Virus record (IMG/VR): IMGVR_UViG_3300023174_000042
Location: 186,001-250,000 of that record
Direction: 5' to 3' (one strand)
Length of the DNA: 64,000 nucleotides
The notes under the pieces are model-generated. The model saw only the letters and a list, made by a program, of their open reading frames with translations. It made no database searches and had not been told where the DNA came from. A program made the position numbers and the translations under genes. Shown one piece after another: positions 24,176-60,899 of this stretch (the first letter of the stretch is position 1; each line of letters starts with the position of its first letter).

Positions 24176-24182
24176 TTATTTG

Positions 24183-24554: not shown

Positions 24555-25304
24555 TTAAATAACTTCTCTTGTGTCAATATGTGCCTCATACATTAATCTT
24601 CTTGTTGATAAAGATCTGTAATAATAATAGTCTTCCAAAATAGACTCAAACAAACCGCTCACAAATCCTGATGCCGCATCCCAAGCATTTGAAAGTCCTT
24701 TCCCAACTGCCTGTGCCCCGCTTTGAATAGCGCTTCCTACCGCTTGAGCTCCTTTTTTAATTCCTTGTCCTACAGCTTGAACACCACCTTTAACAAAGTT
24801 GTATGCTTTATTCAACATGTTTCCTGCAAATTGTTTTACGTAAGACCAAAGTTCAGCAATTTTTGAGGCGGCGATAACTGCGGCCCCCCAAGCGGCTTGT
24901 CCTAATTTCCATATGGCATCAAACATAGATTTAAAAAATTGTAATATGTTTGTAGATGCTTTACTGATAAAACTAGAAATTTGATTTGCGGTATATTTAA
25001 TGGTTTGAGCGGCACCAATTACTATACCTTTAACTTGTTTTGCAAGTGCGGTTAAAAAACTCAAAATAACATTTCCAATTGCCTGTGCCACTTTAAAAGT
25101 AGCCTGACCAAGTTTAATTCCAACAATTGCAGGAAGAAAAATGATTGTCAATGAAATTTGACCAATTTTAATTACCGTTTGTTTGACAGCTTTACCAGCC
25201 TGAAAGCCAGCTTTGAATGCCGCGCTTTGGACATTTTGTTCTGAAATAACTTGTTTGATAACTTTTATCAAATCATTTTCAGTTAATTTTATTACCTTTT
25301 TCAT
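24555..25304 (-). CDS. tagged amphipathic Ala/Gly-rich helical-repeat protein
   Basis: MKKVIKLTENDLIKVIKQVISE tag; 11-residue GAQAVG repeats; hydrophobic segments. Confidence 0.75.
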   Translation of the reverse strand: MKKVIKLTENDLIKVIKQVISEQNVQSAAFKAGFQAGKAVKQTVIKIGQISLTIIFLPAIVGIKLGQATFKVAQAIGNVILSFLTALAKQVKGIVIGAAQTIKYTANQISSFISKASTNILQFFKSMFDAIWKLGQAAWGAAVIAASKIAELWSYVKQFAGNMLNKAYNFVKGGVQAVGQGIKKGAQAVGSAIQSGAQAVGKGLSNAWDAASGFVSGLFESILEDYYYYRSLSTRRLMYEAHIDTREVI

Positions 25305-27465: not shown

Positions 27466-27550
27466 CAGAGGAGGAGGGATTCGAACCCCCGGATCCGTAA
27501 AGATCAACGGTTTTCAAGACCGCCTCATTCGACCGCTCTGACACTCCTCT
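27466..27550 (-). tRNA. tRNA-Ser(TGA)
   Basis: GCGGT-CTTGAAA-ACCGT anticodon arm, long variable arm GATC-TTTACG-GATC, G73. Confidence 0.93.
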
Positions 27551-29539: not shown

Positions 29540-29542
29540 TTT

Positions 29543-30661: not shown

Positions 30662-30668
30662 AATTTTT

Positions 30669-36587: not shown

Positions 36588-37118
36588 ATGAAAATAAAAC
36601 AAATAACAGAAAGAGATATTAATAAAATTGTTAGATCTGTTCTTAAAGAAGATGATATGTCTTTTAAATCAAAAAAGAAAGATAAAAAACCAAGTTGTCT
36701 ACCTGAGAATGTGATTCCTCTTGACGAAATTGTCGGAAGATCTGATGAATACTCAAGATATACTCCAGGAATTACTAAAAGAATATCAGGAGTAAATTCT
36801 ATGGTAGACACATTAGGTATATTAAACAACTTACGATTGTTTAAAGATGTTAAAGATGGGGGATCTCATTTGGCTTACGAAATGATGAATCATTTAAATA
36901 GATTCAGAAATAAAAATTATTACGACGAAACAACCGGAAATTGTCACAAAGCAATGGATAAGATAATTGAATTGTATAAAGAAAATGAACACGGGACAGA
37001 ATTAGTAAAAGATATTGAGAGAGTTTTGAACCTTCAAACAAGAGAAGACGAATATACTCCGTCACCAAGAGCAAAAGAATATTTAAAGCAATCTATAAAC
37101 TTAGTAAAAGGAATGTAA
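36588..37118 (+). CDS. tagged hypothetical protein
   Basis: MKIKQITERDINKIVRSVLKE tag. Confidence 0.8.
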   Translation: MKIKQITERDINKIVRSVLKEDDMSFKSKKKDKKPSCLPENVIPLDEIVGRSDEYSRYTPGITKRISGVNSMVDTLGILNNLRLFKDVKDGGSHLAYEMMNHLNRFRNKNYYDETTGNCHKAMDKIIELYKENEHGTELVKDIERVLNLQTREDEYTPSPRAKEYLKQSINLVKGM

Positions 37119-42068: not shown

Positions 42069-42596
42069 TTATCTACCTAATCTTGTGTCTCTATCTACTC
42101 GTCCTTTAAGCGCTAATAGTAATCCTGCAAATACCATTGCTGCGGATACTGGACCACCACCCATTTTGTCAACATAATCATGAACTTGGATCATAAGTTC
42201 ACCAGCGTCAGTATATCCCATTGCTTGACTAATCATACCCAAAGCACCGGCTCCCATCATACCTAATCCACCTCTCATCATTGCTTTTTCTTTGAATGAT
42301 TTCATTCTGTCTGAAATATCCTCTCTTAGAAACATTTCAGTTAAACCTTCAACTTCTTGATTGCTAACAATATCTTCCAAATCTTCAATTTCTTCGTCAT
42401 CCAATCTTCTTAATTTCTTTTCGAAAAAGTCAGCAATTGTGTTTACTACTTCAGATTTATCCATTTTACTGTAATCACTTTCATTATCCATTTCGTGATC
42501 ATCAGATTCCATGCCCATTTCATTTTGAGTTTCGATAATAATTCTTTTGATTAAAGAATGAAACTCTGATTCTGTAAGTCTAATTTTTCTTCCCAT
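42069..42596 (-). CDS. tagged protein with C-terminal hydrophobic hairpin
   Basis: MGRKIRLTESEFHSLIKRIIIE tag; Gly/Met-rich TM-like segments. Confidence 0.8.
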   Translation of the reverse strand: MGRKIRLTESEFHSLIKRIIIETQNEMGMESDDHEMDNESDYSKMDKSEVVNTIADFFEKKLRRLDDEEIEDLEDIVSNQEVEGLTEMFLREDISDRMKSFKEKAMMRGGLGMMGAGALGMISQAMGYTDAGELMIQVHDYVDKMGGGPVSAAMVFAGLLLALKGRVDRDTRLGR

Positions 42597-42649
42597 TTTT
42601 TTATTTTATTTATAAATATATTGTTATTTGAAATAAATTGGTATTTAAT

Positions 42650-43548: not shown

Positions 43549-44040
43549 TTATAATAAATCATTAAGATTTTTCCATTTTTTACATTTACTTTTTTTGGGA
43601 ATCATGGCCACAATGATAATGATTAAAATAAAAATTCCAATCGCAATTAAAATTCCAGGAGAGACCGCAATTGTTCCTATCATAATTGCCTCAGTTAGTT
43701 GTTCTTTTACTTCTTCCTTTTTCTGAGATTTTTTTAATGATAAAAAGGCATCCTTAACTTTTTTGAATGTTTCTTTCAATTTTGTTTTATTTTGTGGGTC
43801 ATGAGCCCAATCCCAAATTTTGGATAAAATTGTGTCATGTTCTTGATTTCCGGTTTTTGGAGGAGAGCAAATAGGATTGGATTTATCCAAAACATTTTTA
43901 ACTTCAACATTCAAACCTTCCAAATTTGACAAATTTTGTATTTTACTTAAATCCGATGCTTGATCTATTTTTGTTTCCTCTTCATTTAACAAACCCATCA
44001 TTTGTCTAATTGTATTTATTTCATTTAATAAATTATTCAT
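43549..44040 (-). CDS. tagged protein with C-terminal TM helix
   Basis: MNNLLNEINTIRQMMGLLNE tag. Confidence 0.75.
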   Translation of the reverse strand: MNNLLNEINTIRQMMGLLNEEETKIDQASDLSKIQNLSNLEGLNVEVKNVLDKSNPICSPPKTGNQEHDTILSKIWDWAHDPQNKTKLKETFKKVKDAFLSLKKSQKKEEVKEQLTEAIMIGTIAVSPGILIAIGIFILIIIIVAMIPKKSKCKKWKNLNDLL

Positions 44041-44062
44041 TTTGATTTTTTTTTAATAAATA

Positions 44063-44401
44063 TTACTTTTTTACAAAACAGAAAGGTTTTCCGTCTTTCA
44101 TTATTGTAATACCAAGTTCGTCTGAAGGTGCTTTAGGATCAAATGTTAAATCAACATTATTAACTCTCTTACTTTCTTCATCTTTTAGAGAGTGTGTGTT
44201 GAAAGAAACCATGGTTGTATCTGACTTCATCATCATAGAAAAACAATCAGGAAGTATGTTAAAATCAGGAATAGGTCGTCTGTAATCCATTTTATCGGGC
44301 TGAACACCTGGTAGGTTAGAAAATTCCATTTCATTTATTAATTGTCCTCTTTTGTAGTCAAGAAGATATTTGATTTGAGACAGTTGTTCTTGGATATTCA
44401 T
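44063..44401 (-). CDS. tagged hypothetical protein
   Basis: Probable start MNIQEQLSQIKYLLDYKRGQLINE. Confidence 0.75.
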   Translation of the reverse strand: MNIQEQLSQIKYLLDYKRGQLINEMEFSNLPGVQPDKMDYRRPIPDFNILPDCFSMMMKSDTTMVSFNTHSLKDEESKRVNNVDLTFDPKAPSDELGITIMKDGKPFCFVKK

Positions 44402-45639: not shown

Positions 45640-46500
45640 TTACATAAACTTACTTATATAGTAATCAATCAATTCCTTAATTGGCTCGATTAACAATTTA
45701 GGATATTCATTATTTAAAAAATTAATTAGTTCTGAAATAGACTCAAAACTTTTTGGGGTATAACTTGTTTGAAAACCTTGATTGTCATACATATCATAAT
45801 AATCACCAGATTCCCTATCTTCAAAATATCCTCCTTCAACAGGAGTTCTACACTCACCATTCCAATAAGGTGTTGCAAACCCACTTAACATGTAGTCTGG
45901 ATTGTAATATTCAAAAGTAATAGCACCACCAAAAGTGTCCCAATTTAGAACTAAATCTACAGTTCCGTCATCAAAACTATGTTTTTTATTTACTAAATCA
46001 GTATAATTAAAAAGTATTCTAACTAATTTTTCAGCAAAATCACAATTAATATGCATTTTTTTATCTTTTAATAAAAAAATTATTTGTTCTAAAGATAATC
46101 CTGTCAATTCTGAAATTTCTTTAAAATCCATACCATCATTATACATTTTATAAATGAGTTTTGAATTTTTATCAAAAGTTGATTCATTAATATTTTTTTC
46201 TAAACGAGACATAAAGTAATCTTTAATTTTCGTGTAATATTCATTTGTAATATATCGTTGGGTTTGGTTTCTTAATGTCACTTTTTCATCTCCTGTAAGT
46301 TTTGTTTGATTTGCAATTTCATTTGCTAATTTCATTACAACAGTGGATTCAAATGAACGGTAAAGTCTTTTGTCTAAAGGAGTGTTATAATTACCTTGTA
46401 AGTAACTGTAGACTAAATCCATAGTAGGATCAATTAATCTTTCAATTTCACCGATTCGTCTAATAAGACCAAGTTGATTTTCTGAAATTAATATTTTCAT
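45640..46500 (-). CDS. tagged two-module protein
   Basis: MKILISENQ tag; internal KNINE linker before an HTH-like segment (GMDFKEISELTGLSLEQI). Confidence 0.75.
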   Translation of the reverse strand: MKILISENQLGLIRRIGEIERLIDPTMDLVYSYLQGNYNTPLDKRLYRSFESTVVMKLANEIANQTKLTGDEKVTLRNQTQRYITNEYYTKIKDYFMSRLEKNINESTFDKNSKLIYKMYNDGMDFKEISELTGLSLEQIIFLLKDKKMHINCDFAEKLVRILFNYTDLVNKKHSFDDGTVDLVLNWDTFGGAITFEYYNPDYMLSGFATPYWNGECRTPVEGGYFEDRESGDYYDMYDNQGFQTSYTPKSFESISELINFLNNEYPKLLIEPIKELIDYYISKFM

Positions 46501-46727: not shown

Positions 46728-46971
46728 TGTATGATTATATTTTTACAAATATAAATATTTTTTTTTATTCACAAAAAAAATCATTCATTTTTTTCATCAT
46801 TATCGTTTCTGACATTTTTTTTCACGATTTTTTTAAATTTTTTAAACTTAAGTGTGTCTTTTGATATTCCTGATGAAGAGTGTTCTCTAATTTTTGGTTT
46901 TTTCATTTCATTAGATAATTTAACATTAAATATTTAAGATCATCAAATGTTTTATTTTTTAAAAAGACCAA

Positions 46972-47060
46972 AAAAAAACCCGAAGGGTTCAGGTCAAAAA
47001 ATTTCCGACGTAGTCGGGAAGTGGTTTCCGGCACCCCACACAAAGGAAGAAAAATAAAAA
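46972..47060 (-). repeat. structured intergenic repeat, copy 1 (candidate small RNA)
   Basis: Three hairpins; near-identical to 48037..48121. Confidence 0.75.
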
Positions 47061-47234
47061 ACCCCCAATAATAATTAAAAATTTATGAATTATTTGATTT
47101 ATCATATATAATCCAAAAAACCCAATATAAAATTTGATAACAACCAATTAAATTAATTATTTGTTTTGGCAAATATATAAAAGAAACAATTGTTAAAACA
47201 ATTACAAAAAATATATATAAAAACTTTTTTAAAA

Positions 47235-47970: not shown

Positions 47971-48036
47971 ATAAATAAATATAGTGTTCGACCTCTTTTT
48001 TTAATGAACCATTTTAATAAGTTATAATATAAAACA

Positions 48037-48121
48037 AAAAAACCCCGAAGGGTTTAAGTCAAAAATTTTCGACGAAGTCGTAGGGGGTTTCCGGCCCCCC
48101 ACACAAAGGAAGAAAATAAAA
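48037..48121 (-). repeat. structured intergenic repeat, copy 2
   Basis: See 46972..47060. Confidence 0.75.
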
Positions 48122-48151
48122 AAAAGTATTTTATTTTTTTATAAAATAAAA

Positions 48152-48457
48152 TTAATAATCTTCACCCATTTCATCACCCATAGGGTTTCTCAAACTTTCT
48201 GATCCCCAATTTGGATTTCTATGTTTGGAAGCAACTTCCATATTATTCATTTCTAGTTTGATTGCATGTTGTAAAGCCTTCAAATCATCCATAATTTCTT
48301 CAGGAGTTCTTGCCCCCAACATTCCACCTCTTTCTCTTAAAAAAGAATCTACCGCCTTCATAGCACTTGGTAAATTACTCATTTCGCCACTTTCTTTAAT
48401 TACACGTCTAACAATTCTTGTTAAATCTCTTTCGTTTAATCTTACAGTTCTTTTCAT
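48152..48457 (-). CDS. tagged cargo protein
   Basis: MKRTVRLNERDLTRIVRRVIKE. Confidence 0.85.
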   Translation of the reverse strand: MKRTVRLNERDLTRIVRRVIKESGEMSNLPSAMKAVDSFLRERGGMLGARTPEEIMDDLKALQHAIKLEMNNMEVASKHRNPNWGSESLRNPMGDEMGEDY

Positions 48458-48635
48458 AACTTTATTTTTTTTTATTATTTATTTATTTATAAATATATCA
48501 TAAAATAAAAAACCCCCACTTTAAGGGAGAGGATTTAATTTTCAATTATCCGATATACGGTGTTTTTTTTAAAAATTAGTAGAAATTTAAAATTGGTCTT
48601 TATATTTATCGATATCTGAAATAATTTGTTTTTTA

Positions 48636-49064
48636 CTAAAAATCTTGATCATCATCATTATACATATGATCTCCCCACTGATAAGGTTTTTCACTTTCAA
48701 CCCACATACGATTTTTACCGTGGGACCCCTTTCTAATTCCTATCTTTATACTTTTAATTCCATTTTTTGAAATACCTTTAACGATTTCAAAAAAAGTTTT
48801 TTTAACATCAGAAAAATCCATAGAAACCTTGTCTCTTTGATACATAATGTCAGCATCAGATTTATTCATATATGCGCCATATAAATCTTTAATAACATTT
48901 TTTAATTGTTGATCATTTGAATTTTCTACTTCATCCATGACATCTTCAATATCATCTTTTGAAGGTTCTCCCAAGAAGGTTCTTCTTAAAAAATTTGTTT
49001 CAGAAATAACACGTTTAACAATACGAGTTAAATCTCTTTCTGTTAGTCTTACAATTCTTTTCAT
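48636..49064 (-). CDS. tagged cargo protein
   Basis: Probable start MKRIVRLTERDLTRIVKRVISE at 49064. Confidence 0.85.
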   Translation of the reverse strand: MKRIVRLTERDLTRIVKRVISETNFLRRTFLGEPSKDDIEDVMDEVENSNDQQLKNVIKDLYGAYMNKSDADIMYQRDKVSMDFSDVKKTFFEIVKGISKNGIKSIKIGIRKGSHGKNRMWVESEKPYQWGDHMYNDDDQDF

Positions 49065-49131
49065 AATATTTTTATTTATAAATATATTATAAAACAAAAA
49101 ACCCCACTTTAAGGGAGGGGGGGTTTTTTTA

Positions 49132-49530
49132 TTATCCTTTATTAGCTGTTTTTTTAAATTTATAAGTTTTGTAATCTCCTAAATCTTTTAAAATTTTGTT
49201 GTGGTCTACAAGGTAATCAGGTGGTGATAAAGGGTATGTTTTATTTATTATGGTTTTTCCATTAACAGATACAATCAACTGTATCTTTTTAGAACTTGAG
49301 CTATAGTAGATATAAGCACCATTACTATCATCACCTTTACTTAAACCATTAAATACACCATCAGGACCAAGGACACTACTAGCATTATTTAGTTTTTCAA
49401 ACCCGTATGGGGTAAGTGCTTGAGCAAGATGATACATAGGACTATGTGTTCCACCTTCCATTTCTTCATTAATAACTCGTCTTACAATTCGAGCCAAGTC
49501 TGATTCTGTTAATCTTACAATTCTTTTCAT
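49132..49530 (-). CDS. tagged cargo protein
   Basis: Probable start MKRIVRLTESDLARIVRRVINEEM at 49530. Confidence 0.85.
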   Translation of the reverse strand: MKRIVRLTESDLARIVRRVINEEMEGGTHSPMYHLAQALTPYGFEKLNNASSVLGPDGVFNGLSKGDDSNGAYIYYSSSSKKIQLIVSVNGKTIINKTYPLSPPDYLVDHNKILKDLGDYKTYKFKKTANKG

Positions 49531-49644
49531 AATATTTTTATTTATAAATATATCAATCAAAAAAAAAAAACGATTTTTTTATAAAAATTTTTTTTCAGTA
49601 TTTGACCATATTTGAAATGGGGGGGTTAATTTATTTATAAATAT
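49458..49644. repeat. promoter+tag DNA repeat, copy 1
   Basis: Near-identical to 49975..50161 and similar to 52270..52420. Confidence 0.9.
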
Positions 49645-49705
49645 ATCATAAAATAAAAAACCCCACTGATGAGGTGGGGGATTTAATATGTTGTATGTTT
49701 AATTA

Positions 49706-50047
49706 TTATATTTTTGATGTTATTGTCGAATAAACTTTATCAACCACTCTATGATCTCCACTCACTGTACCATTTACTCCAGGTTTACCGTATCTGAACA
49801 CTCCTCTTAGATTCGATGGATTTTTAATATCAAAATGATAATATTGTACATAACTAGCATTTGGGTCTTTACCTTTTTGTAGCATTTCGTTTCCATCGGG
49901 ATCTGTAGAATATTTAAACCCTTTAGGTTCATAATGGTTTCTTAATTTTTTCCAAACGCAATCAGCGTCGCATCCCATTTCTTCATTAATAACTCGTCTT
50001 ACAATTCGAGCCAAGTCTGATTCTGTTAATCTTATAATTCTTTTCAT
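49706..50047 (-). CDS. tagged cargo protein
   Basis: Probable start MKRIIRLTESDLARIVRRVINEEM at 50047. Confidence 0.85.
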   Translation of the reverse strand: MKRIIRLTESDLARIVRRVINEEMGCDADCVWKKLRNHYEPKGFKYSTDPDGNEMLQKGKDPNASYVQYYHFDIKNPSNLRGVFRYGKPGVNGTVSGDHRVVDKVYSTITSKI

Positions 50048-50161
50048 AATATTTTTATTTATAAATATATCAGTCAAAAAAAAAAAACGATTTTTTTTAT
50101 AAAAATTTTTTTTGTATTTGGTGTTTATTTGAAAAGGTGGGGTTAATTTATTTATAAATAT
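49975..50161. repeat. promoter+tag DNA repeat, copy 2
   Basis: See copy 1. Confidence 0.9.
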
Positions 50162-50610
50162 CTTTCTCTTAGAGTTTCTCTAACAATTCTTTTAATTAAA
50201 GATTCATCAATCACACTTTCACCTTTTCTTTTTTCATCATAACCATAGACAGTTGTATAAACACTGAATGGTAGATCCTCCAAATACTCAAGATAAAAAT
50301 CATCTCTAAGTTCTTGAATATACCAAATGTCGTTATCATAACCACTATCGGCCCAAACAGGATAATAGTCCTCACCATTTTTTGTTATAGAATCAATAAT
50401 AGTATCTATATCACCAACGGCATCTATTCCTTCACCAATAACACTTCTAACGACAATATGAAATTTAAATTCATAGATGATATCACCAAGAACATAGTTA
50501 TATCCATCATAAACATCTTCAGTATCTGTGAGCGTCATTTCAAACTCCTTGTTTTCAAAGAGTTTCTTTAATAAATTTTTTAGTTTTTTATTTCCAATAT
50601 TTATTTTCAT
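50152..50610 (-). CDS. hypothetical protein with C-terminal tag
   Basis: Ends VIDESLIKRIVRETLRERYL. Confidence 0.75.
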   Translation of the reverse strand: MKINIGNKKLKNLLKKLFENKEFEMTLTDTEDVYDGYNYVLGDIIYEFKFHIVVRSVIGEGIDAVGDIDTIIDSITKNGEDYYPVWADSGYDNDIWYIQELRDDFYLEYLEDLPFSVYTTVYGYDEKRKGESVIDESLIKRIVRETLRERYL

Positions 50611-50939
50611 GGATCAACAAAATTAAACACCCAAACTGCGGTCCATTTACCATCTTTCTTTGGGAATAATGACTCAAACATCTCATCAATATCATTTGTT
50701 ATGGGTGAGTTATCTGATTCTCCATCATGAAATGATTGTTCATGATCATTTGTTTTAATATTAAACCTATACAACGGAACCTTATATGATTTCGGATGTC
50801 TAAACATAAATGGTTCAACTTTAACACCATCGATTCCTTCATACCAAGGATATTCAGATAGAATATAATCAATATATTTTTCAAATACTTTGATCTTTCT
50901 AAGAGACTCCGCTTGATCTTCAGTTATAATGATTTTCAT
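50607..50939 (-). CDS. tagged hypothetical protein
   Basis: MKIIITEDQ tag. Confidence 0.75.
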   Translation of the reverse strand: MKIIITEDQAESLRKIKVFEKYIDYILSEYPWYEGIDGVKVEPFMFRHPKSYKVPLYRFNIKTNDHEQSFHDGESDNSPITNDIDEMFESLFPKKDGKWTAVWVFNFVDP

Positions 50940-51331
50940 AAAAATAAATGAAATCCTCCGTTTAGTATTTGTTCAACATTTTGATCATATCTTTTATTGA
51001 ACCAATCAACTACCATTTGTTTATTAGGGATATAATCCATAATTGTGTTATATATATCTTCTCTAATATACAAACTTTTTGGATTTTCAATCGGCATAAT
51101 TCTACTTTGTGGGTCATCTGAATCCCAATAGGAACTTTTAAATGGTTCTACAACTCTAAAGAGCATTTTTTTTAGATGAGGATTATAATACCCAACACTA
51201 GTTTTATGAAAACTCCAAGGGTCTTTAATAACGTGAGATTCCAAATTATCTAAGTCCAAGTCAGAAAACATGGAGTCAAAGAATTTCTCAATAAGTGTTT
51301 CGTTAATAATTCTTTTAATTATATGATCCAT
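50936..51331 (-). CDS. tagged hypothetical protein
   Basis: MDHIIKRIINE tag. Confidence 0.75.
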   Translation of the reverse strand: MDHIIKRIINETLIEKFFDSMFSDLDLDNLESHVIKDPWSFHKTSVGYYNPHLKKMLFRVVEPFKSSYWDSDDPQSRIMPIENPKSLYIREDIYNTIMDYIPNKQMVVDWFNKRYDQNVEQILNGGFHLFL

Positions 51332-51416
51332 AATGATAAATAGTTAGGATTTTCTAAAATTTTTTCTGGAAATTTTTTTTCAGTATTTGACCATAATTGA
51401 AATGGGGGGTCATGTT

Positions 51417-51836
51417 TTAGAAATCCTCTTCTTTAAAATACATATCAATAATATCTGAGAATCTTAAACCCATTATTGCGATTCCAAGTTGTTCGGGTAT
51501 TTCATTTTCAATATATATATTTCCATTCTCATCAATAAACTTCTCATGATCCCCCACATCTAAATAAAGATATTTTTTCCCGTCAAGTTCAAAAAGATAC
51601 ATAGGTCCATATTTGTTTAAATAACGATTAATCAATCCAGGTGAAATATATCCAGCAAATTCCATTGGAATATCATAAGTTGAGGTTATTTGTTGAATGC
51701 CATTTGTAAAATCAATACCCAACTTGTTTTTTAAAAACTTTTTGTTTTTTTCTAACATAGAGTCATTTTCACTAATCACTCGTTTAACGAGGTTAGTTAA
51801 TTGTCCGTATTGATCTTCAGTTATAATGATTTTCAT
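51417..51836 (-). CDS. tagged cargo protein, standalone paralog of a module of 57199..60255
   Basis: MKIIITEDQY...VKRVISE, then LEKNKKFLKNKLGIDF...NRYLNKYGPMYL. Confidence 0.8.
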   Translation of the reverse strand: MKIIITEDQYGQLTNLVKRVISENDSMLEKNKKFLKNKLGIDFTNGIQQITSTYDIPMEFAGYISPGLINRYLNKYGPMYLFELDGKKYLYLDVGDHEKFIDENGNIYIENEIPEQLGIAIMGLRFSDIIDMYFKEEDF

Positions 51837-51909
51837 ATTAGATAAATATAATGGAAAATAAAAAACCCCACTCTTATGAAGATGGGGGTTTAGTAATAAC
51901 AATATGTTT

Positions 51910-52341
51910 TTAATTTAGTCCTTTAATTATTTTTTTTACTGTTGAGATAACATTTTGTGGGTTTGAGTAGTCTAATGTAAGGTCGTCTGTATAATATTTA
52001 CCGTCAAAACTAGGAGATTTACCGGTTAATGTTTCGTATGCATCGGCTGTGTCCTCGTCTTGAGTTCCAAACTTTAATCTTTGGTCATCTGAGGATACGC
52101 TAATACCCCATGGTTTTTTTTTCCCTGCATCACTATGGTTTCCCCAATTTAATGATGTGATTTTTTTTCCTTCATACGTAAAAGGAATTATTTTTGGGCT
52201 ATTTCCTGATACATCGGTAAATGATTTTAAACCCGAATAAATAATTGGCCAATTATCAGTAGCACCTTTCATTTCTTCTTTAATAACTCTTTTAACAATT
52301 CTTGCTAAATCCGATTCTGTTAATCTTATAATTCTTTTCAT
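51910..52341 (-). CDS. tagged cargo protein
   Basis: MKRIIRLTESDLARIVKRVIKEEM. Confidence 0.85.
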   Translation of the reverse strand: MKRIIRLTESDLARIVKRVIKEEMKGATDNWPIIYSGLKSFTDVSGNSPKIIPFTYEGKKITSLNWGNHSDAGKKKPWGISVSSDDQRLKFGTQDEDTADAYETLTGKSPSFDGKYYTDDLTLDYSNPQNVISTVKKIIKGLN

Positions 52342-52399
52342 AACTTTATTTTTTTTTATTATTTATTTATAAATATATCAATCAAAAAAAAAAAAAAAG

Positions 52400-54025
52400 A
52401 TTTTTTTATAAAAATTTTTCCATAAATTTTTTTGTGAATACTTTATAGAGGGGATTGAACCCCCCTTTGCCCCTGACAGAAAGTCACTTATGGGGGGGAT
52501 ACGGTAGGGGGGAGGGGGGTATATAATAAGGTAGGGGCCTATGCCAAACAAGAAGGGAGGGGATATGTAGGAAGGGGTTTTTATTAAAAGTTATAAACAA
52601 TAAAGCATAAAAAAATTCCCCATCTATTAGAAAGAGATTAGATTTAAAGATCCCCTCGTTTGAGAATCATATGTAATGTTGTTTTAAAAACCTCATCTTA
52701 TTTTTTACGTATCACTTGGATGACTAAATAACTAATTCCCAACTCCACTGGCGTGTCGGTCTTCGACACCGTGGGGAAAATAAGATTTCTATTAATAAAT
52801 ATATTATTGTTTTAAAAAAGATCAATGGTTTATTTGTTTATGTCAATTTTTTTATCTACCTTTATAATGACACTAAAAATAAAGGTTAAGTCGGGCTTGA
52901 GAGAACAACAAGATGGAGCTTCCATCAGAGGCAGCCTCTCTTATAATGTTTATTGTTAATCCCCAATGTTTTTTACTGATTGTAGTTTTGAACTTGAGAT
53001 AGTGAGTGATCACGTATTAGTTTATTAACTTCTTGAAGATTCTCACTTGACAGTGGGGAATTTAAGTGAATGAATTCTATAACATCCCCCATGTCTGTAT
53101 TAGTAAGTAACAATGCTTTTTGTTTAAATCTTTTAACAGTCCCAAACAATTTTGGAGAATTATTTACATCAATTAGTTTATATTCACAATAACCTGTCAG
53201 TGTGTCATGTTTATAATTGACAAATATGGAACCATTATTTTCACTAACCTCTGTATCGAACTTTTCTATCAGGTGTATCATTAAAGTTGGTTTTTAATAT
53301 TATTTTTTTATTAAATACTTGAATATGTCAAAATGTCAGTCGGAGGGTTGAACACGACACAATCCCCTTCCCCACTTTTTTACCACAAACTCCCACAATA
53401 ATCTACCACTATTTCCCACCATAATTGGTCCTGTTGCTATACTGAGAACAAAAAAATCCCTTTTCTTGCTATCTACAGGACCACTTTTTTTACTACTCAT
53501 GTTTTCCAGCTAAAAAAGTATAGTTATAGAACAAAGTGCGTGTATAGTCCTTTAGGACGTTAGAATACAACTTCAACGACCACTTTAGTGATTTATTAAA
53601 CCCCAACTTAGTGTCTTACTTAGATCCAACTTAACCTTCGACCCACAAATTATAGACACTTAATTAGACTTGTAAACCACTTAATTATTCATATTCATCT
53701 TATGTCTATTGACATATAAATAATATAAAACATAAGTTACTAATTGATCTACTAAAACAAAGTGGTAGTAAGTGGGAACCACAATATATAAAACTTTATA
53801 AATAGATCACAAATTAGTCTTCTTTATTTCTGTCACTCTTTAATGGGGGTCTTTAATTTTGGTGGGGGGATTACATTACTGTTTAATATATGTGGTAATT
53901 AGTGGGACATATCTTTTATAGAAATGTAAGAGTATAAGATAAATTTATGAGGTGAATTCTGAAACGGAGTGTAACGTAGTGAAAGACTATGAACCGAATG
54001 AATTGATCATATACTCTTACAATTA
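52400..54025. other. gene-poor region with G-tracts, phased GTGG repeats and hairpins (candidate origin or packaging/terminus region)
   Basis: Only one ~100-aa ORF in 1.6 kb; G-runs at 52492-52578; CCAC repeats at 53372-53419; inverted repeat at 53925-54021. Confidence 0.4.
52973..53281 (-). CDS. hypothetical protein
   Basis: 102 aa ORF, no recognisable motif. Confidence 0.5.
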   Translation of the reverse strand: MIHLIEKFDTEVSENNGSIFVNYKHDTLTGYCEYKLIDVNNSPKLFGTVKRFKQKALLLTNTDMGDVIEFIHLNSPLSSENLQEVNKLIRDHSLSQVQNYNQ

Positions 54026-54029: not shown

Positions 54030-54905
54030 TCATACAAAATATAACCTTAAATATTCTGATCTTATTGTATCTATGATTGGGTAACCGCCAATTGAAGAAA
54101 TTATAAGTTCTAATTCATTGTTTAAATCATTAAGTTCTCCTTTTTTTACGATTTCTCCTAGTAAAACTGGATTTTCGTCTTCCCATCCGCTGTTTGAAGG
54201 AAAAGGTTTATATTCATGATACTCTCTCCACCGTTTTTCTCCCCACTTTTCATCTACTTTTAATTTGCCGTGAATTGTTATTTTATGAAAGAATTCATCA
54301 TAACTAATATGATTTATTTCTATTTTTTTAAACCACTTAAATTTTTTTGGTATTATTTTATTTATTACCGTTTCTACATTAAAATCTTCTTCTGAATTTT
54401 TGGCTTCTTTTAATGTTTTATTTTTTTTTTTAACACAATTAGGGTATCTTTTACCAAACATAGTTTTCATTCCTTTTTGAGTATATCCTTTCCAACATTT
54501 TTCTGTAAGTTCGCCTTCTTTCATTTCTTGTTGGTTATCAGACATACTTCCCACTATTTGATTATATCTTTCTTTTATTCTACTACCATAATGTCTAAGA
54601 AGTGGTTTTCTAATTTTATCATAATAGAAATCGTCGTCCTCAAAATATATACGGTTATCATTGGTGAAATAATCTTGTTCTAAATATGTTACCATCTCGT
54701 CAATAACAAATTTCGCAAATAACCATAGAGTGGTTCCTTTTTCTTTATATATAACAGAATTTGGGTTTTCCATTGATTCACTCATTCTATCTAATGCGGA
54801 TTCAAATGCCTCTTCTATAATTTCAGTTGATATTCTTCTTATAATAACAGGAGGTATATGTGTTTCTTCTCTTAATACTTTTCTGATATGTTCTTGTAGG
54901 TTCAT
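54030..54905 (-). CDS. tagged multi-module protein
   Basis: MNLQEHIRKVLRE tag; internal CWKGYTQKGMKTMFGKRYPNCVK mini-module bounded by LTE and LKE. Confidence 0.8.
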   Translation of the reverse strand: MNLQEHIRKVLREETHIPPVIIRRISTEIIEEAFESALDRMSESMENPNSVIYKEKGTTLWLFAKFVIDEMVTYLEQDYFTNDNRIYFEDDDFYYDKIRKPLLRHYGSRIKERYNQIVGSMSDNQQEMKEGELTEKCWKGYTQKGMKTMFGKRYPNCVKKKNKTLKEAKNSEEDFNVETVINKIIPKKFKWFKKIEINHISYDEFFHKITIHGKLKVDEKWGEKRWREYHEYKPFPSNSGWEDENPVLLGEIVKKGELNDLNNELELIISSIGGYPIIDTIRSEYLRLYFV

Positions 54906-54906
54906 A

Positions 54907-55344
54907 TTAACAATCTCCTATACCATAAAAAATGCAGTCAATAAGTTCTGCATCATTTTTATCCCATATATAAACCATAGAATCATTATCATTCATTCTA
55001 TCCCTACATAATCTATGGTGTCCATCTACTACAATTAGTTTTCCCTTGTGTTTGTATAAATGAATATCTTTTTTATCATATGTTTCATCGGACATATCAT
55101 TTACGTAGTCCATATTAATATCTTTTTGAAGACTATAAACTTTTTTTGTTGGTGACAATCTTTGTTTTTTTGGGTTAAGTGTGTGTATTAATTCATCACT
55201 ATCATTTACCACCATATCAAAAATGTTTGTGGATTCTAAATCTTTTTTTAATTCAGGTTCGTATATAATTCCACAGTCTTTATGACTTTCGGTTATCATC
55301 CACATCATTGATTTCATTCTTGATATTTGTTCTTGTAGATTCAT
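54907..55344 (-). CDS. tagged ParB/Srx-like domain protein
   Basis: MNLQEQISRMKSMMWMITE tag; SLQ...LIVVDGHHRL. Confidence 0.75.
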   Translation of the reverse strand: MNLQEQISRMKSMMWMITESHKDCGIIYEPELKKDLESTNIFDMVVNDSDELIHTLNPKKQRLSPTKKVYSLQKDINMDYVNDMSDETYDKKDIHLYKHKGKLIVVDGHHRLCRDRMNDNDSMVYIWDKNDAELIDCIFYGIGDC

Positions 55345-55345
55345 A

Positions 55346-55942
55346 TTATAAATCACTTTTAACCATATTATAGAAATACTCACTAACCTTTTCAGGTGAG
55401 TTTATATTCATTCTTCTCATTTGATTTTTATGTTGTTGAACCATCATAGATACTTGTTGTATTGGAAGGTTCTTATACATTTGTGGTGATCTAAAATTTT
55501 TACTTATCAGATCTTTTTTTTGTAGTTGTCTTATTTTTCTTCCTGCGAACTCATCGGCAACTTCTTCTGTATGTTTCATAAAGTCGGCAGCTTCCTCATT
55601 GGATAGTTCCCCAATATAACAATCATACATTATATTTTCACCATACTTTTTAAATTGATATTGGTGAGAAATCTCGTGGAAGATAACAAATAACGCATCT
55701 TCCAATCTACGACTAAGAATTTGTTTGTTGATCAAAACAACATCGTGTAATGCCAAACCTAAAACAGGTATTTTGAAATTGGAAAACTCAATTTTTTTAC
55801 AATCTGAATTCTCAATAAATTTAACAACCTCATCTTTTAACTCATCTGAAATATTAAAAGCATCGGACAACTCATTTATAAAACTTGATATTCCTTCAGT
55901 TTCTTCCTTTAATATTCTTCTTATTTGTTCTTGTAGGTTCAT
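55346..55942 (-). CDS. tagged zinc metallopeptidase-like protein
   Basis: MNLQEQIRRILKE tag; VIFHEISHQYQ...EEVADEFA. Confidence 0.75.
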   Translation of the reverse strand: MNLQEQIRRILKEETEGISSFINELSDAFNISDELKDEVVKFIENSDCKKIEFSNFKIPVLGLALHDVVLINKQILSRRLEDALFVIFHEISHQYQFKKYGENIMYDCYIGELSNEEAADFMKHTEEVADEFAGRKIRQLQKKDLISKNFRSPQMYKNLPIQQVSMMVQQHKNQMRRMNINSPEKVSEYFYNMVKSDL

Positions 55943-57198: not shown

Positions 57199-60100
57199 CT
57201 AATCCCAATAACCAATTTGAATTGTTTCCATCATCCAAGAAAGAATTGATAATAACTCTTCATTAGTTAAGCTGTTAATTGTTGTTAGGTATTGGTCTTT
57301 TGTTATCCTCTGACCATAATTATCTTCATAATATTCCCATATTTCAACAGCAATTTGGTCGCTATCTTGAACCATAATATCATAAATTAATTTGGTATTA
57401 CTTAGTCGTATTTTTAGACCAAAAAGAGAACCACTATTTTTACTACTCATCCCATCATGTTCTAAAACATATTCTCTAATATATTGTTTAATTATTTTTT
57501 TTGGATTGTCTATTTTATTTAAAATTGATTTGACTTGATTGAAGTCTAATCCTGACATTTCAATAAAGTTGTATAATCCGTCTTTTTCTATAATTTTTTG
57601 TAATGATTGTTTTTTATTATCCGATTCATTTATATTTTTATCAAAATGTATGTGATATTTGAAATTAAGTGGAAATATATCAAGATCCTCCATAACTTGT
57701 TTTCCTACTTTTTTAATAACTGAGTTAATTCCACCACCCAATTTGACGGACTCAACTGGATCAAAAAATATATTTACAATAACATCATCAAATTGTTCAT
57801 CGTAATATAACATGAATTTTTTTACACTCAGATATTCGTTGGAGTTTAAATAATCTTCTACATTTTGAATCAATTTATTAAACTTTCTTTCTTGTTTAGA
57901 TTCGTCAGATTCGTTTATAACATTACCTTCATCATCATATTTTATTTTTTGAACATCAATATAAAGGTCTGCATTTTTATATTTCCAATCCCAACCGTAA
58001 CCCCACCATGGAGATAAAATAACACCATCTCCTGTCAGTTCCATAATTTCATCTATTATTTTATGTGTAAACCAATTATCGTAGTTTGCTGCGGTATCTT
58101 CCACATCATGAAAGACTTTGATAAGTGGTTTTCCTTGATAATTTGTATCGACTTCAATAAATTCAACCTCATCAAAAAGATTATAAATCATTTCTTTTAC
58201 TAACTTAAGTTTTTTATCTTCTGATTTATTTTCTGATTCCATCAAATCATCTATTTTTTGACATTTTGTTGTGTCATACGCTAAATAAAGATTATCAACA
58301 ATTGGAAAAAAATCTTTTATCATTTTTTTTATCTCGGTTCTTGTTTCGTGAAATGTAAAAGGTCTAAATTTGTTTTTTTTGTATTTTAGAATCAATCTTA
58401 AAGAAGGTTTTTCAGAATATTTTGAATCAAAAAAACTATCTATTTCAATCCCACATAACAATTCTTTATCAACGACACTGTATACCATGTCATTTAAAAG
58501 TTTTTCATATTTTGAAAAGTCATTATGTTCAAATTTACTTTCTGATTCCACAAGTTCTGAATCTTCCCTTAATGTTCTTCTATTAGGTGAATCTTCAGGC
58601 CAAGAATTTAAAATATCTTCACTACTTCCTGTCCCTTCATATTTTAAAGTTATCGCCTCTTTTGGGATATCTTGAAATGTTACAATATGTTTTGACCTTG
58701 ACTCAAAATGTCTATCTTTAAACCATTTAACATCTGGAATCTTTGTTGTGTCAATAAACCAAATGTCGTCATCATATGTTGAATCAAACCAAGCTCTTTT
58801 GTTTGTTGAGTTGGTTGCAAAAATTGCTGGTTTACATTTAACCCCATAACCCACATATATTTTATAACATTCTCCGGCTCTTACTTTAAGACCGTTTTCC
58901 ATTATCTTATCTCTGAACTTTGGATTGGATTTATGGACAACAATCTGATTGGGTTTTACTTCTTTACCCGCCGGACTATAATCTTCGTTTTCGTTTAATA
59001 CTTCATCAGAATTTTCTTCATTAAAAAATAAATCCACAATAGTTTTAAGTGAAATTCCTGTGTGGTCAATTTTAATTTTTTCTGTATATTCTCGGTCTGT
59101 ATAATTTAAACCGTCTTCACTATCTATAACTAAACCTTCATCACCATTACCCGTAATATATAAAGGATTGTATAAGATATATTCTTTATTAATTTTCATT
59201 AGATAACAAGGACCATGATTGTTCATAAATCGGTTTAACCAATCATTTGAAATAAAATTAAAAGTTTGCCACGGTAAATCCCAAGCACTTTGAACTAATT
59301 CTATTTTACCATCGAAATCAATTCCTAATTTGTTTTTTATAAAATTCTTATTTTTTTCTTCTAACTTATTTTCATTTAAAAAACTATTTTCTTCTTCATT
59401 ACAGTTCGAAGTTTGTTCTCCACGAACACCAATTACTACTCCTGTATAAGTTGCAATTTCTTTTGAAATGTCATCTAAAACTTCAATATACATGTTTCTT
59501 ATACCTTGTGTCATGGGCCAAAGTTTTGTTCCGTAACCTCCAATAAATAAAACTGTAACTTCAGGTATATTAAAAACTTCGTTTAATGTGATTTCATAAG
59601 AACAAATGATATGATTATATTCAGGAAGTATTAGGTCTTCCATAATCATTTTTGTTATTTTTAAAAGTTTTTTTAAATCCTTTTCACTTTTGTTTGAACT
59701 TTCATTTAAACTTTCAGATTCACCATAAAGTTTGTTGTGTATTCTTATCACATCTTTTTTTGAAAAAGAATATTCATCCTCATGTATATCGACATCTTTT
59801 CCGTTTATTTGTTTAATATCAAAATAATTGGAGTCTTTAAAATTAAGTGTTTTTGTTTTTATTTTTCCTGTGGTATTATCGTTTTGAATTACGGCGATTA
59901 TGGATTTTAAAGTTTCATTTTCACTTGGACTTAATTTATCTTCGTCATAAATAAGATTTAATTCAGGCCAAGAATTTGTTTCCGATATATTTTTTCTAAT
60001 GTTTATTATTTCATACTGAAGTGGAAATACGATAGGTTTTGGGTCTCTGAAATAATCATATACTGAAAAATCAACAACACCTGTTAAATCATCTAATATT

Positions 60101-60255: not shown

Positions 60256-60899
60256 TAATATAATCCTCTTAATCTATCATACTCAACGTTACGAAGTTTT
60301 TCTAAATATGTTTTTTCAATCCATCCTGGACTTTCTTCTTCTTGTTTCATTATGGCATCTCTTCTAAAAAGTGTGGTTTTAAGAATAAGTTCTATCATAT
60401 CCTCCTCAGTCACGCCTTCAGGTTTTGTCATTGGTGGAACACAAGTTTGAGCATCTCTATCATCTATATTAAATTCAGAAATATGAATGTCATTTCTACC
60501 CATCTTACTTTGAATTTCACCTAAATAGGTGTCGTCAAACCATTCTTCAAAAAGGTATTTTAAGTAACTTGCTCTAACAGGAATATCAGACATCAACTCT
60601 TTAAATATATCATTTGGAATATAAATTGAACCTGATTCAAAATCTCTTTCTTCAGTTTTTCTTCTATCGTCAAAAACATCACTATTATCTTCAAAAAATA
60701 ATATAAATTTCATTATTTCTTTTCCATGATTACACCATTCAAAATCATGTCTTGTTTCCCACGATTTGTCATGATACATTTTTGCACCATCAAAATAGTT
60801 GTTTAACCACCTATAAACAAGTTGTTCTACCTTTGGTGTAGGTTTAGAATATTTTCTAGTAACCTCATCTTCTAATATTAATTTAATTAAATTTCTCAT
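60255..60899 (-). CDS. tagged hypothetical protein
   Basis: MRNLIKLILE tag. Confidence 0.8.
   Translation of the reverse strand: MRNLIKLILEDEVTRKYSKPTPKVEQLVYRWLNNYFDGAKMYHDKSWETRHDFEWCNHGKEIMKFILFFEDNSDVFDDRRKTEERDFESGSIYIPNDIFKELMSDIPVRASYLKYLFEEWFDDTYLGEIQSKMGRNDIHISEFNIDDRDAQTCVPPMTKPEGVTEEDMIELILKTTLFRRDAIMKQEEESPGWIEKTYLEKLRNVEYDRLRGLY

What the first reader, a model, noticed from the sequence alone, without database searches (positions are those of the whole stretch)
48152..52420. Constant promoter+tag DNA cassettes fused to variable cargo
Seen: 49458-49644 and 49975-50161 are nearly identical over ~185 bp (T-tracts, TATTTATA motif, 5' UTR, first 24 codons). Identity ends right after ...VINEEM, where the proteins become dissimilar. 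52270-52420, ~48390-48520 and ~49005-49090 are further copies. Most units end in a related AAAAACCCCAC...GGGG terminator. Inference: recombination through the constant promoter/tag and terminator sequences swaps or amplifies cargo, giving an integrase-free cassette array that diversifies injected proteins.
Basis: partly seen in the sequence, partly recalled or inferred. Interest (0 to 1): 0.82.

Follow-up and report, generated by a model that had tools for sequence, protein, structure and literature searches.

The report
Leader-tagged gene cassettes shuffled by recombination
An uncultured 272-kb freshwater phage carries a row of small genes that share a promoter-like motif and a 22-residue N-terminal leader but differ in the rest, and close relatives show that crossovers inside this shared DNA add, remove and swap the genes, much like the injected "internal protein" genes of phage T4.

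Summary
Five minus-strand genes (G1 48152-48457, G2 48636-49064, G3 49132-49530, G4 49706-50047, G9 51910-52341) begin with the same unit. It consists of the palindrome TATTTATAAATA 8-26 nt before the ATG, then 22 codons (consensus MKRIVRLTESDLARIVRRVINE). Cargo follows that BLASTP cannot align, and four of the five end in a CCCC/GGGG terminator. The G3 and G4 units are 94-98% identical over 187 bp.

Relatives with 95-99% identical flanks carry different cassettes. Two contigs that are 99.9% identical differ by a 370-nt cassette. The crossover lies in a 34-nt stretch of the leader and leaves a chimeric leader. So recombination at the constant 5' unit is shown; recombination at terminators is not.

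The promoter motif is not cassette-specific, because ATATTTAT precedes 28 of 82 genes, including portal and terminase. The leader is a selected peptide (dN/dS about 0.19). It occurs in at least 6,491 protein clusters, in many viral contigs, and in only one of 185,579 cellular genomes.

"Injected" remains an inference. The lineage has a T4-type prohead protease, the leader ends in invariant I-x-E, and one cargo family occurs with four unrelated leaders that all end in hydrophobic-x-E. Closest known systems are the T-even Ip/CTS hotspots and PeSL shuffling. I rate it a new variant of a known kind.

The parts
51910..52341 (-). G9 cassette gene (143 aa); leader codons 52276-52341
   Evidence: An 84% identical homologue lies in L001-L003 in a different neighbourhood.
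52364..52375 (-). Promoter-like palindrome TATTTATAAATA of G9, 22 nt before the ATG, preceded by an A/T-tract block up to about 52420
   Evidence: The 99.9% identity between L002 and L003 begins at the equivalent A/T-tract block.
51863..51891 (-). Intrinsic terminator after G9
   Evidence: -12 kcal/mol, z = -2.6, followed by a U-tract.
51417..51836 (-). G8 (139 aa). Its leader is a hybrid: MKIIITEDQ followed by ...LVKRVISE
   Evidence: It matches the leader plus the C-terminal half of a 283-aa protein in L005.
50152..51331 (-). G7-G6-G5 block with overlapping stop and start codons; these genes lack the T1 leader
   Evidence: In L032/L033 the G6-G5 homologues sit between two other genes, with the junction in the MKIIITE(D/E)Q codons.
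49975..50161 (-). 5' unit of G4: distal palindrome 50149-50160, A/T tracts, proximal palindrome 50056-50067, leader codons 49982-50047
49706..50047 (-). G4 cassette gene (113 aa)
   Evidence: A 90% identical homologue lies in L003 upstream of a different cargo.
49661..49679 (-). Intrinsic terminator after G4
49458..49644 (-). 5' unit of G3: distal palindrome 49632-49643, proximal palindrome 49539-49550, leader codons 49465-49530
   Evidence: Identity with L003 collapses at 49461, right after VINE.
49132..49530 (-). G3 cassette gene (132 aa): leader helix, disordered linker, alpha/beta cargo domain
   Evidence: AF2 model with mean pLDDT 83: helix 9-22, residues 20-28 below 50, core above 90. 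No fold match in PDB or BFVD.
49096..49129 (-). Intrinsic terminator after G3
48636..49064 (-). G2 cassette gene (142 aa); leader 48999-49064; palindrome 49073-49084
48513..48527 (-). Intrinsic terminator after G2
48152..48457 (-). G1 cassette gene (101 aa); leader 48392-48457; palindrome 48484-48495
48114..48140 (.). Boundary between the variable array and the conserved backbone
   Evidence: The 95-99% identity with L001-L003 starts at 48140 and with L031 at 48114.
24555..25304 (-). Dispersed gene with the T1 leader (249 aa, hydrophobic, tape-measure-like) and the palindrome at 25314-25325
42069..42596 (-). Dispersed gene with a T1-like leader (175 aa, acidic then glycine-rich hydrophobic) and the palindrome at 42607-42618; conserved in relatives
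36588..37118 (+). Dispersed gene with a T1-like leader (176 aa)

Best explanation
The region is a hyperplastic array of self-contained expression cassettes in a 272-kb T4-like-headed jumbo phage, whose host is probably a member of the Bacteroidota.

Each cassette has:
- a phage-type promoter-like motif (TATTTATAAATA, a version of the genome-wide ATATTTAT) 8-26 nt before the ATG;
- a 22-codon leader (a short strand-like MKRIVRL, then an amphipathic helix TESDLARIVRRVINE);
- a flexible linker and a small globular ORFan cargo;
- usually an intrinsic terminator.

Shown: the 100-190 bp 5' unit recurs in direct orientation. Homologous recombination within it deletes, inserts and replaces cargos and homogenises neighbouring 5' units. 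No integrase is involved.

Inferred: the leader is a head-targeting propeptide, functionally analogous to the T4 capsid targeting sequence. It would dock the cargo to the prohead core and be cut off after the invariant Glu22 (I-x-E) by the lineage's gp21-family protease. The cargos would then be packaged and delivered with the DNA.

My confidence is about 0.85 for the recombination part and about 0.45 for the head-targeting part.
For: Recombination
- Relatives whose flanks are 95-99% identical (window 48140-47212, 46512-44063, 48114-47765) have different cassette sets.
- L002 and L003 are 99.9% identical but differ by 370 nt. The crossover lies in a 34-nt identical stretch that codes RLTERDLTRIV. 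L003 and L001, which are independent assemblies, carry the chimeric leader.
- The same pair diverges completely upstream of the A/T-tract start of the 5' unit.
- L003 has a G3-type promoter and leader, then a different cargo, with identity ending after VINE.
- The G6-G5 block was relocated with its junction in the MKIIITEDQ codons.
- The G3 and G4 5' units are 92-98% identical, while their cargos match only at profile level.

The leader is a selected peptide
- Invariant positions are L7, E9, D11, L12, R14, I15, V16, R18, V19, I20, E22.
- dN 0.22 against dS 1.13 across 142 versions.
- 6,491 representative proteins carry it, nearly all at residues 1-29.
- In 77 viral loci there are 192 leaders, 81 of 112 same-strand spacings are under 1.5 kb, and 175 cargos fall into 101 clusters.
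- Only 1 hit in 185,579 cellular genomes and none in 50,697 GenBank phage records.

Head targeting
- A relative with a 95% identical portal has the order portal, Peptidase_S77 protease, scaffold-like protein, gp23. A contig carrying a G3 homologue also has S77 and Gp23.
- T4 gp23 is cut at FLTE65|A. The relative's capsid protein has FLINE60|A at a comparable position just upstream of the block aligned (correspondence placed by eye).
- T4 ipII and ipIII share an identical 30-nt CTS (MKTYQEFIAE) and similar upstream DNA. In T4, residues I8 and E10 govern processing (PMC9026906).
- The G3 cargo family occurs with four unrelated leaders that all end hydrophobic-x-E...RVINE, MRLLNFNQFVNE...KNLSE...KLYE/MAVE.
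- AF2 shows the leader helix detached from the cargo by a disordered linker.
- The cassettes share their promoter motif with portal, terminase and head genes.
Against: - Nothing here shows packaging, cleavage or injection.
- The leader has no sequence similarity to the T4 CTS and is twice as long.
- The residue after Glu22 is usually Q, E, N or K, not the Ala seen at the T4 sites retrieved here.
- About 46% of the window's 82 ORFs have a [LIVMF][LIV]xE motif in the first 25 residues, against 11% of internal windows. In a 32-kb T4 control the figures are 19% and 10%. That is far more proteins than a head is expected to hold, so the leaders may serve another purpose.
- Some proteins carry internal copies of the motif, and G5 ends in a leader-like helix.
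- The protease and capsid genes lie outside the window. They were seen only in relatives.
- All comparisons rest on metagenome assemblies. Logan contigs break at every repeat and cannot confirm cassette order across them.
Confidence: 0.55

Rival explanations
1. The cassette shuffling is real, but the leader is not a capsid-targeting propeptide. It would be a general N-terminal module of this phage clade with another role. Candidates are a docking or oligomerisation strand-helix, an address for another phage-built assembly or compartment, or a handle for a phage chaperone such as the ClpB-like ATPase at 10750-12792.
For: - Leader-like N-termini of several classes (MKIIITEDQ, MNLQEQI, xxFIISEQEKxRILxMH, MKELIRHILKEE) occur on about 45% of ORFs, including proteins of 498 and 1018 aa.
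- The motif also occurs internally and at a C-terminus.
- The residue after Glu22 differs from the Ala seen at the T4 sites retrieved here.
- A ClpB-like ATPase is encoded in the window.
Against: - The leader is invariantly N-terminal in 179 of 192 cases.
- It always ends in I/V-x-E.
- One cargo family carries unrelated leaders that share only that ending.
- The leader is separated from the cargo by a disordered linker.
- The lineage has the matching protease family.
Confidence: 0.3
2. This is an ordinary tandem paralogue family. The genes would share an N-terminal domain and a temporal-class promoter by descent, and recombination at the repeats would be incidental with no role in diversification.
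For: - G3 and G4 cargos are remote homologues. G1/F22 (47%) and G2/F17 (30%) are also related.
- The promoter motif is genome-wide.
Against: - With the leader removed, the five window cargos give no significant BLASTP match to each other.
- 175 cargos fall into 101 clusters.
- The same cargo occurs with different leaders.
- Identity steps from 98% to about 25% at the junction.
- Relatives with 99% identical flanks share at most 74-76% identical cassettes.
Confidence: 0.1
3. The apparent cassette differences are chimeric metagenome assemblies, joined wrongly at the 140-190 bp repeats.
For: Short-read assemblies can mis-join at repeats. Logan contigs break at every repeated unit, and low-depth alternative joints occur at repeats in run X1.
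Against: - The L002/L003 crossover repeat is only 34 nt, shorter than the 141 in L002's k141_ contig name, which I read as its assembly word size. The deletion form appears identically in two independent assemblies.
- All window cargos are present at 99-100% identity and at even depth in three runs from two studies.
- Independent contigs bridge G8 and G9.
Confidence: 0.05

Closest known systems
T-even phage internal proteins (IpI, IpII, IpIII and relatives) with the capsid targeting sequence, in polymorphic hotspots
   Same: - Small, otherwise unrelated, non-essential proteins share only an N-terminal leader (PMC12373910, PMC3012670, PMC9026906).
- In T4 the leader and the upstream DNA are also conserved at nucleotide level between ipII and ipIII.
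- The leader ends in I-x-E.
- The phage has portal, gp21-family protease and gp23-type capsid genes.
- The loci vary between close relatives.
   Different: - The leader here is 22 residues rather than 10 and has no sequence similarity to the T4 CTS.
- The scale is far larger: arrays of several cassettes, at least 6,491 protein clusters, and about 45% of ORFs with leader-like N-termini.
- Packaging, cleavage and injection are unproven here.
- The phages are uncultured 270-295 kb phages of fresh and marine water, not Tequatrovirus.
[quoted passage not shown] 2010, PMC2839356; Comeau et al. 2014, PMC4122927)
   Same: - Repeated units of about 100 bp (promoter plus stem-loop) flank ORFans in hyperplastic regions.
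- Indels between near-identical phages have breakpoints in the repeat and leave a chimeric repeat. The RB49/phi1 ORF192 case matches L002/L003 here.
- No integrase is involved.
   Different: - PeSLs are intergenic sigma-70-type early promoters. Here the motif is neither the E. coli nor the Bacteroidota consensus, it is shared with head genes, and the recombining repeat runs 66 nt into the coding sequence. The crossover therefore also swaps or chimerises a protein leader.
- Mini-circles could not be tested.
Integron gene-cassette arrays
   Same: Rows of small, mostly ORFan genes in one orientation, with content that differs between close relatives.
   Different: No integrase and no attC sites. 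Each cassette has its own promoter. Exchange is by homologous recombination in a shared 5' unit.
Polymorphic toxin loci (CDI, Rhs) with orphan modules
   Same: A constant N-terminal coding sequence is joined to variable C-terminal modules, and recombination at the constant/variable junction displaces cargo.
   Different: The constant part here is only 22 residues. The cargos are whole small proteins with no paired immunity genes and no toxin domains.

Membership tests
T-even Ip / capsid-targeting-sequence system | An N-terminal leader shared by otherwise unrelated small proteins | tested here: met
T-even Ip / capsid-targeting-sequence system | The phage encodes a T4-type prohead core with a gp21-family (Peptidase_S77) protease | tested here: met
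   Found in L034 (portal 95% identical to the window's) and in the P0020 contig. The gene itself lies just outside the window, so it was seen only in relatives.
T-even Ip / capsid-targeting-sequence system | The leader ends in the protease recognition pattern (I/L-x-E) | tested here: met
   I20 and E22 are invariant. The predicted capsid-protein site FLINE|A compares with T4 FLTE|A.
T-even Ip / capsid-targeting-sequence system | Leader homologous to the T4 CTS (MKTYQEFIAE) | tested here: not met
   No similarity beyond the hydrophobic-x-E ending; 22 residues against 10.
T-even Ip / capsid-targeting-sequence system | Proteins are packaged in the head, processed and injected | not testable with these tools
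   No isolate and no proteomics. GenBank phage records lack the leader.
PeSL modular shuffling | A repeated promoter-plus-stem-loop unit flanks ORFans in a hyperplastic region | tested here: met
PeSL modular shuffling | The promoter is a host sigma-70-type early promoter | tested here: not met
   Sigma-70-like sites are not enriched (41 found, 51 expected). The motif differs from the Bacteroidota TAnnTTTG type seen before other genes and is shared with head genes.
PeSL modular shuffling | Indels between near-identical genomes have breakpoints in the repeat and leave a chimeric repeat | tested here: met
   L002 against L003/L001.
PeSL modular shuffling | Excised mini-circles | not testable with these tools
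   Only Logan contigs were available, and they break at the repeats.
Integron | Integrase gene and attC recombination sites | tested here: not met
   The nine array proteins (G1-G9) and the flanking 286-aa protein have no Pfam family above threshold, and G1-G9 have no PHROG family. The junctions are homologous crossovers. The rest of the 272-kb genome was not searched.

The most novel reading that the evidence does not exclude
The 22-residue leader and its sister classes would be a clade-wide address label placed on up to half of the proteome of a widespread group of uncultured 270-295 kb phages. It would direct thousands of unrelated ORFan cargos to a common destination, either the prohead or another phage-built structure. 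Its coding DNA would double as the recombination joint of a leader-based cassette system. The protein signal and the DNA exchange site would then be the same element, on a scale not described for any phage.
Probability: 0.2. Interest if true: 0.85.

Novelty: new variant of a known kind. Interest (0 to 1): 0.62.

Why it matters
If the leader is a packaging signal, it marks a very large catalogue of candidate injected proteins: at least 6,491 clusters at 50% identity, almost all without a known domain. These would come from an abundant, uncultured clade of freshwater and marine jumbo phages. In T4 every characterised member of the equivalent class is an inhibitor of a host restriction system (PMC12373910), so this would be a rich place to look for anti-defence functions.

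The L002/L003 pair also gives a clean natural example outside the enterobacterial T4-like phages of repeat-mediated, integrase-free cassette exchange. Here the exchange site lies inside a coding sequence, so recombination always yields an in-frame, expressed and correctly labelled protein.

The leader profile gives a simple search handle for such genes in metagenomes.

Tried and rejected
- Pfam and PHROGs on G1-G9: no family.
- Pfam on 65 long tagged proteins: one weak GNAT match only.
- Pfam on ten other leader-bearing window proteins: only a sub-threshold OmpA-like match.
- AF2 model of G3 searched against PDB and BFVD: no match with E <= 0.001.
- ESM Atlas with the leader: unnamed clusters only.
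- Rfam on 46-54 kb: nothing near threshold.
- blastn and tblastn against 50,697 GenBank phage records: no relative of the region or of the leader.
- Literature search for the motif: no paper.
- Reading the leader as a nucleotide-level element such as a translation enhancer: rejected, because synonymous sites are nearly saturated while the peptide is conserved.
- Reading G5's C-terminal leader-like helix as a recombination scar: rejected, because it is native to the G5 family in L032.
- Folding the G-rich spacer 52420-52800 on both strands: no more stable than shuffles.
- Laying reads to confirm cassette order or to find circles: only Logan contigs were available and they break at each repeat. 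The low-depth joints have sides of only 21-40 nt and were not used as evidence.
- Cargo isoelectric points: bimodal and uninformative.

Full report
**Context.** The window is 100% identical to part of IMG/VR contig IMGVR_UViG_3300023174_000042, which is 272,576 bp. It is about 30% G+C and carries six tRNA genes. It also encodes a T4-type portal, a large terminase, a ClpB-like ATPase, a VanY peptidase and a protein with SprB repeats and a type IX secretion C-terminal domain. The last feature points to a Bacteroidota host. So do the TAnnTTTG motifs before some genes and the single cellular-genome hit, which is a 3.3-kb contig binned with a lake Bacteroidetes MAG. No GenBank phage is close. The best portal matches are Microcystis phage Mel-JY01 (42%) and Flavobacterium phage immuto (37%). 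A relative with a 95% identical portal (L034) has the T4 head-gene order: portal, two small proteins, a 155-aa protein, a Peptidase_S77 (gp21-family) protease, a 493-aa acidic scaffold-like protein and a gp23-type capsid protein. By synteny the protease lies just beyond the start of the window.

**Observation.** Nine small genes lie head to tail on the minus strand between 48152 and 52341. Five of them (G1, G2, G3, G4, G9) start with MKR(I/T)(V/I)RL(T/N)E(S/R)DL(A/T)RIV(R/K)RVI(N/K/S)E. Each is preceded by the palindrome TATTTATAAATA, 8 to 26 nt before the ATG. The palindrome occurs 10 times in the window against 0.14 expected. The G3 and G4 units align at 93.7% over 189 columns, with 98% identity in the 66 leader nucleotides and 92% in the 60 nt upstream. 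Identity ends directly after VINEEM. Hairpin plus U-tract terminators follow G2, G3, G4 and G9, and a different one follows G1. G5 to G8 do not belong to this leader class. G7-G6-G5 form an overlapping block. G8 has a hybrid leader (MKIIITEDQ...LVKRVISE). Three more genes with the leader lie elsewhere in the window, at 25304(-), 42596(-) and 36588(+). The first two have the same palindrome upstream.

**The promoter-like motif is not private to the cassettes.** ATATTTAT lies within 40 nt upstream of 28 of 82 ORFs, usually 4-8 or 13-21 nt from the ATG. These include portal and terminase. In L034 the protease and scaffold-like genes carry it too, and the capsid gene is preceded by the related TATAAATA. 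A second, smaller group of genes has the Bacteroidota-type TAnnTTTG instead. The cassettes therefore use the same class of signal as the head genes. The palindrome contains TATAAATA, the T4 late-promoter consensus (established knowledge). No transcript data were available, so promoter function and timing are inferred.

**The leader is a selected peptide, and it is widespread.**
- In 22 aligned examples, L7, E9, D11, L12, R14, I15, V16, R18, V19, I20 and E22 are invariant.
- Across 142 distinct N-terminal versions from viral contigs, dN is 0.22 and dS is 1.13. Invariant Leu and Arg positions use several codon families. This rules out a purely nucleotide-level element. One caveat applies: the versions were found by peptide similarity.
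- A profile of the leader finds 6,491 representative proteins (clusters at 50% identity) with E <= 0.001 and 656 with E <= 1e-10. Nearly all have the match at residues 1-29. A minority carry a second, internal copy that looks like a fusion of two cassettes.
- IMG/VR holds at least 473 leader-encoding stretches. Many are on contigs of 270-295 kb.
- In 77 such loci there are 192 leaders, and 179 start at a Met. Of 112 same-strand spacings, 81 are under 1.5 kb (median 710 nt). The 175 cargos form 101 BLASTP clusters. The promoter-type motif precedes 103 of the 179.
- The leader is absent from 50,697 GenBank phage records.
- It is found once in 185,579 species-level cellular genomes.
- No Pfam or PHROG family covers the leader or the cargos.

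**Cargo.** With the leader removed, G1, G2, G3, G4 and G9 give no significant BLASTP match to each other. Profile comparison shows that the G3 and G4 cargos are remote homologues (88% probability, E = 3e-6 over 45 columns). G1 resembles a 113-aa cassette of L002 (47%), and G2 resembles a 165-aa cassette (30%). The AF2 model of G3 has mean pLDDT 83. It shows a leader helix (residues 9-22, pLDDT about 60), a disordered linker (20-28, below 50) and a confident alpha/beta domain. That domain has no match in PDB or BFVD.

**Test against relatives.**
- Contigs L001-L003 are 95-96% identical to the window in the backbone (48140-47212 and 46512-44063). L031 is 99% identical over 48114-47765. L005 is about 85% identical, and L032/L033 about 70-80%.
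- Between the same flanking genes, the cassette sets differ almost completely.
  - Window: G9-G8-G7-G6-G5-G4-G3-G2-G1.
  - L003: G8h-G4h-X121-(reverse gene)-G9h-X148-X165.
  - L002: X121-(reverse gene)-G9h-X148-X113-X165.
  - L031: nine other genes, of which only two are 74-76% like window cassettes.
- L002 and L003 are 99.9% identical over 2,081 and 1,245 nt. L002 carries 370 extra nucleotides, made up of the 113-aa cargo plus the 5' end of the next gene. Both segments overlap on 34 nt of L003, which correspond to L002 5555-5588 and 5925-5958. This stretch encodes RLTERDLTRIV.
- The L003 gene has a chimeric leader. Its promoter and MKRTV come from the upstream cassette, and ...KRTIMELDK comes from the downstream one. 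L001, an independent assembly, has the same junction.
- The 99.9% identity between L002 and L003 begins about 75 nt before an ATG, at the A/T-tract start of the 5' unit. Upstream of that point the two are unrelated.
- L003 has a G4 homologue followed by a G3-type promoter and leader, but a different cargo. Identity with the window ends after VINE.
- In L032/L033 the G6-G5 block sits between two other genes, with the junction in the MKIIITE(D/E)Q codons.
- No breakpoint was mapped in a terminator. The right-hand array boundary (48114-48140) lies in an A/T tract just after the G1 stop codon.

**Robustness.** Logan contigs of three runs from two studies hold all five cargos at 99-100% identity and at even depth (112-138 in run X1). 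Independent contigs bridge G8 and G9. These contigs break at every repeated unit, so they cannot confirm order across the repeats. The low-depth alternative joints have short sides and were not used as evidence. The L002/L003 crossover repeat (34 nt) is much shorter than the 141 in L002's k141_ contig name, which I read as its assembly word size. A chimeric-assembly explanation for that event is therefore unlikely.

**What the leader does (inference).** The closest precedent is the T-even internal proteins. They share only an N-terminal leader that directs packaging into the prohead core. They are injected with the DNA, sit in a variable hotspot, and where characterised they inhibit type IV restriction enzymes (PMC12373910, PMC3012670, PMC9026906).
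- In T4, ipII and ipIII share an identical first 30 nt (MKTYQEFIAE) and similar upstream DNA. This is the same architecture as here.
- In IpIII, residues 8 and 10 (I-x-E) govern processing by gp21 (PMC9026906).
- T4 gp23 is cut at FLTE65|A.
- The relative's capsid protein has FLINE60|A, followed by a block that aligns with T4 (41% identity over 44 columns). The T1 leader ends in V-I-N-E.
- The G3 cargo family also occurs with unrelated leaders: MRLLNFNQFVNE, one ending in ...KNLSE, and MSNILSFSKWRKLYESEMAVE. All end in hydrophobic-x-E shortly before the conserved GGTHS start of the domain. One of these lies on a 95-kb contig with S77 protease and Gp23 genes.

**What argues against head targeting.**
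- There is no sequence similarity to the T4 CTS.
- The residue after the Glu differs from the Ala seen at the T4 sites retrieved here.
- Internal and C-terminal copies of the motif exist.
- Leader-like N-termini are present on about 46% of the window's ORFs, against 11% of internal segments (odds ratio 6.8, p = 6e-13). Relatives show 31-56%. A T4 control shows 19% against 10%.

The last figure is the main unexplained observation. It keeps open a different role for the leaders.

**Verdict.** The reading of the region as a recombination-driven, integrase-free cassette array is supported by direct comparison of near-identical genomes. The "injected proteins" part is a well-motivated but untested analogy. 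The system works like a combination of the T-even Ip/CTS hotspot and PeSL-mediated modular shuffling (PMC2839356, PMC4122927). It is not a sequence member of either. It differs in that the recombining repeat includes the leader codons, and in its scale. I rate it a new variant of a known kind, with interest 0.62.

Noticed in passing
whole window; e.g. 57199-62089, 54030-55942, 43549-44401, 28406-31865, 14298-14783: About 46% of 82 ORFs carry a hydrophobic-hydrophobic-x-Glu motif in the first 25 residues, against 11% of internal segments. They fall into several recurring leader classes (MKIIITEDQ, MNLQEQI..., xxFIISEQEKxRILxMH, MKELIRHILKEE). Relatives show the same pattern. A 32-kb T4 control does not (19% against 10%).
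   Followed up: partly
window 52420-52970: A non-coding spacer with many G4-G7 runs bounds the array in a genome of about 28% G+C. It is conserved at 70-80% in L002 and L005. It has no Rfam match and folds no better than shuffled sequence on either strand.
   Followed up: partly
window 48030-48125 and 46968-47062 (minus strand): Two copies of an element of about 90 nt (an exact 27-nt core apart from one base, against 0 expected). It has a G/C hairpin followed by a terminator hairpin. It could be a small RNA or a compound terminator at the edge of the variable region.
   Followed up: partly
window 49575-49624, 50092-50141, 51360-51409: A 50-nt element (...CAGTATTTGACCATATTTGAAATGGGGGG on the + strand) lies upstream of G3, G4 and G7. 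The copies are 68-92% identical and the element is conserved in L003. Its function is unknown.
   Followed up: no
window-wide; e.g. upstream of 13433(+), 15378(+), 27589-28353(-), 32190(+): There are two classes of upstream motif. A Bacteroidota-type TAnnTTTG precedes about 11 genes, several of them signal-peptide proteins. The phage-type ATATTTAT precedes about 30 genes, including portal, terminase and all tagged cassettes.
   Followed up: partly
window 45640-46500 compared with L032 10770-11839 and L033 6025-7360: The 286-aa backbone protein is split in more distant relatives into two ORFs. An extra gene sits between them, and the second half has its own MKIIISESQ leader. Leaders therefore appear at domain boundaries when genes split.
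   Followed up: no
window 51417-51836 compared with L005 2914-3765: G8 (139 aa) equals the leader plus the C-terminal half of a 283-aa protein in a relative. This looks like an in-frame loss of about 145 residues just after the leader.
   Followed up: no
window 24555-25304 and 42069-42596: Two conserved, dispersed T1-tagged proteins are rich in glycine-zipper-like hydrophobic segments. One matches tape-measure PHROGs. This is reminiscent of membrane-active ejection proteins, but it was not tested.
   Followed up: no
proteins P0018, P0019, P0020, P0022 (homologues of G3): The same cargo domain occurs with four unrelated N-terminal leaders, all ending in hydrophobic-x-Glu. One of them (MRLLNFNQFVNE) resembles the T4 CTS MKTYQEFIAE in length and ending.
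   Followed up: partly
window 22848-27550 and 10750-12792: There is a cluster of six tRNA genes (Asp, Glu, Met, Ile, Phe, Ser) and a full-length two-domain ClpB/ClpA-like AAA+ ATPase encoded by the phage.
   Followed up: no
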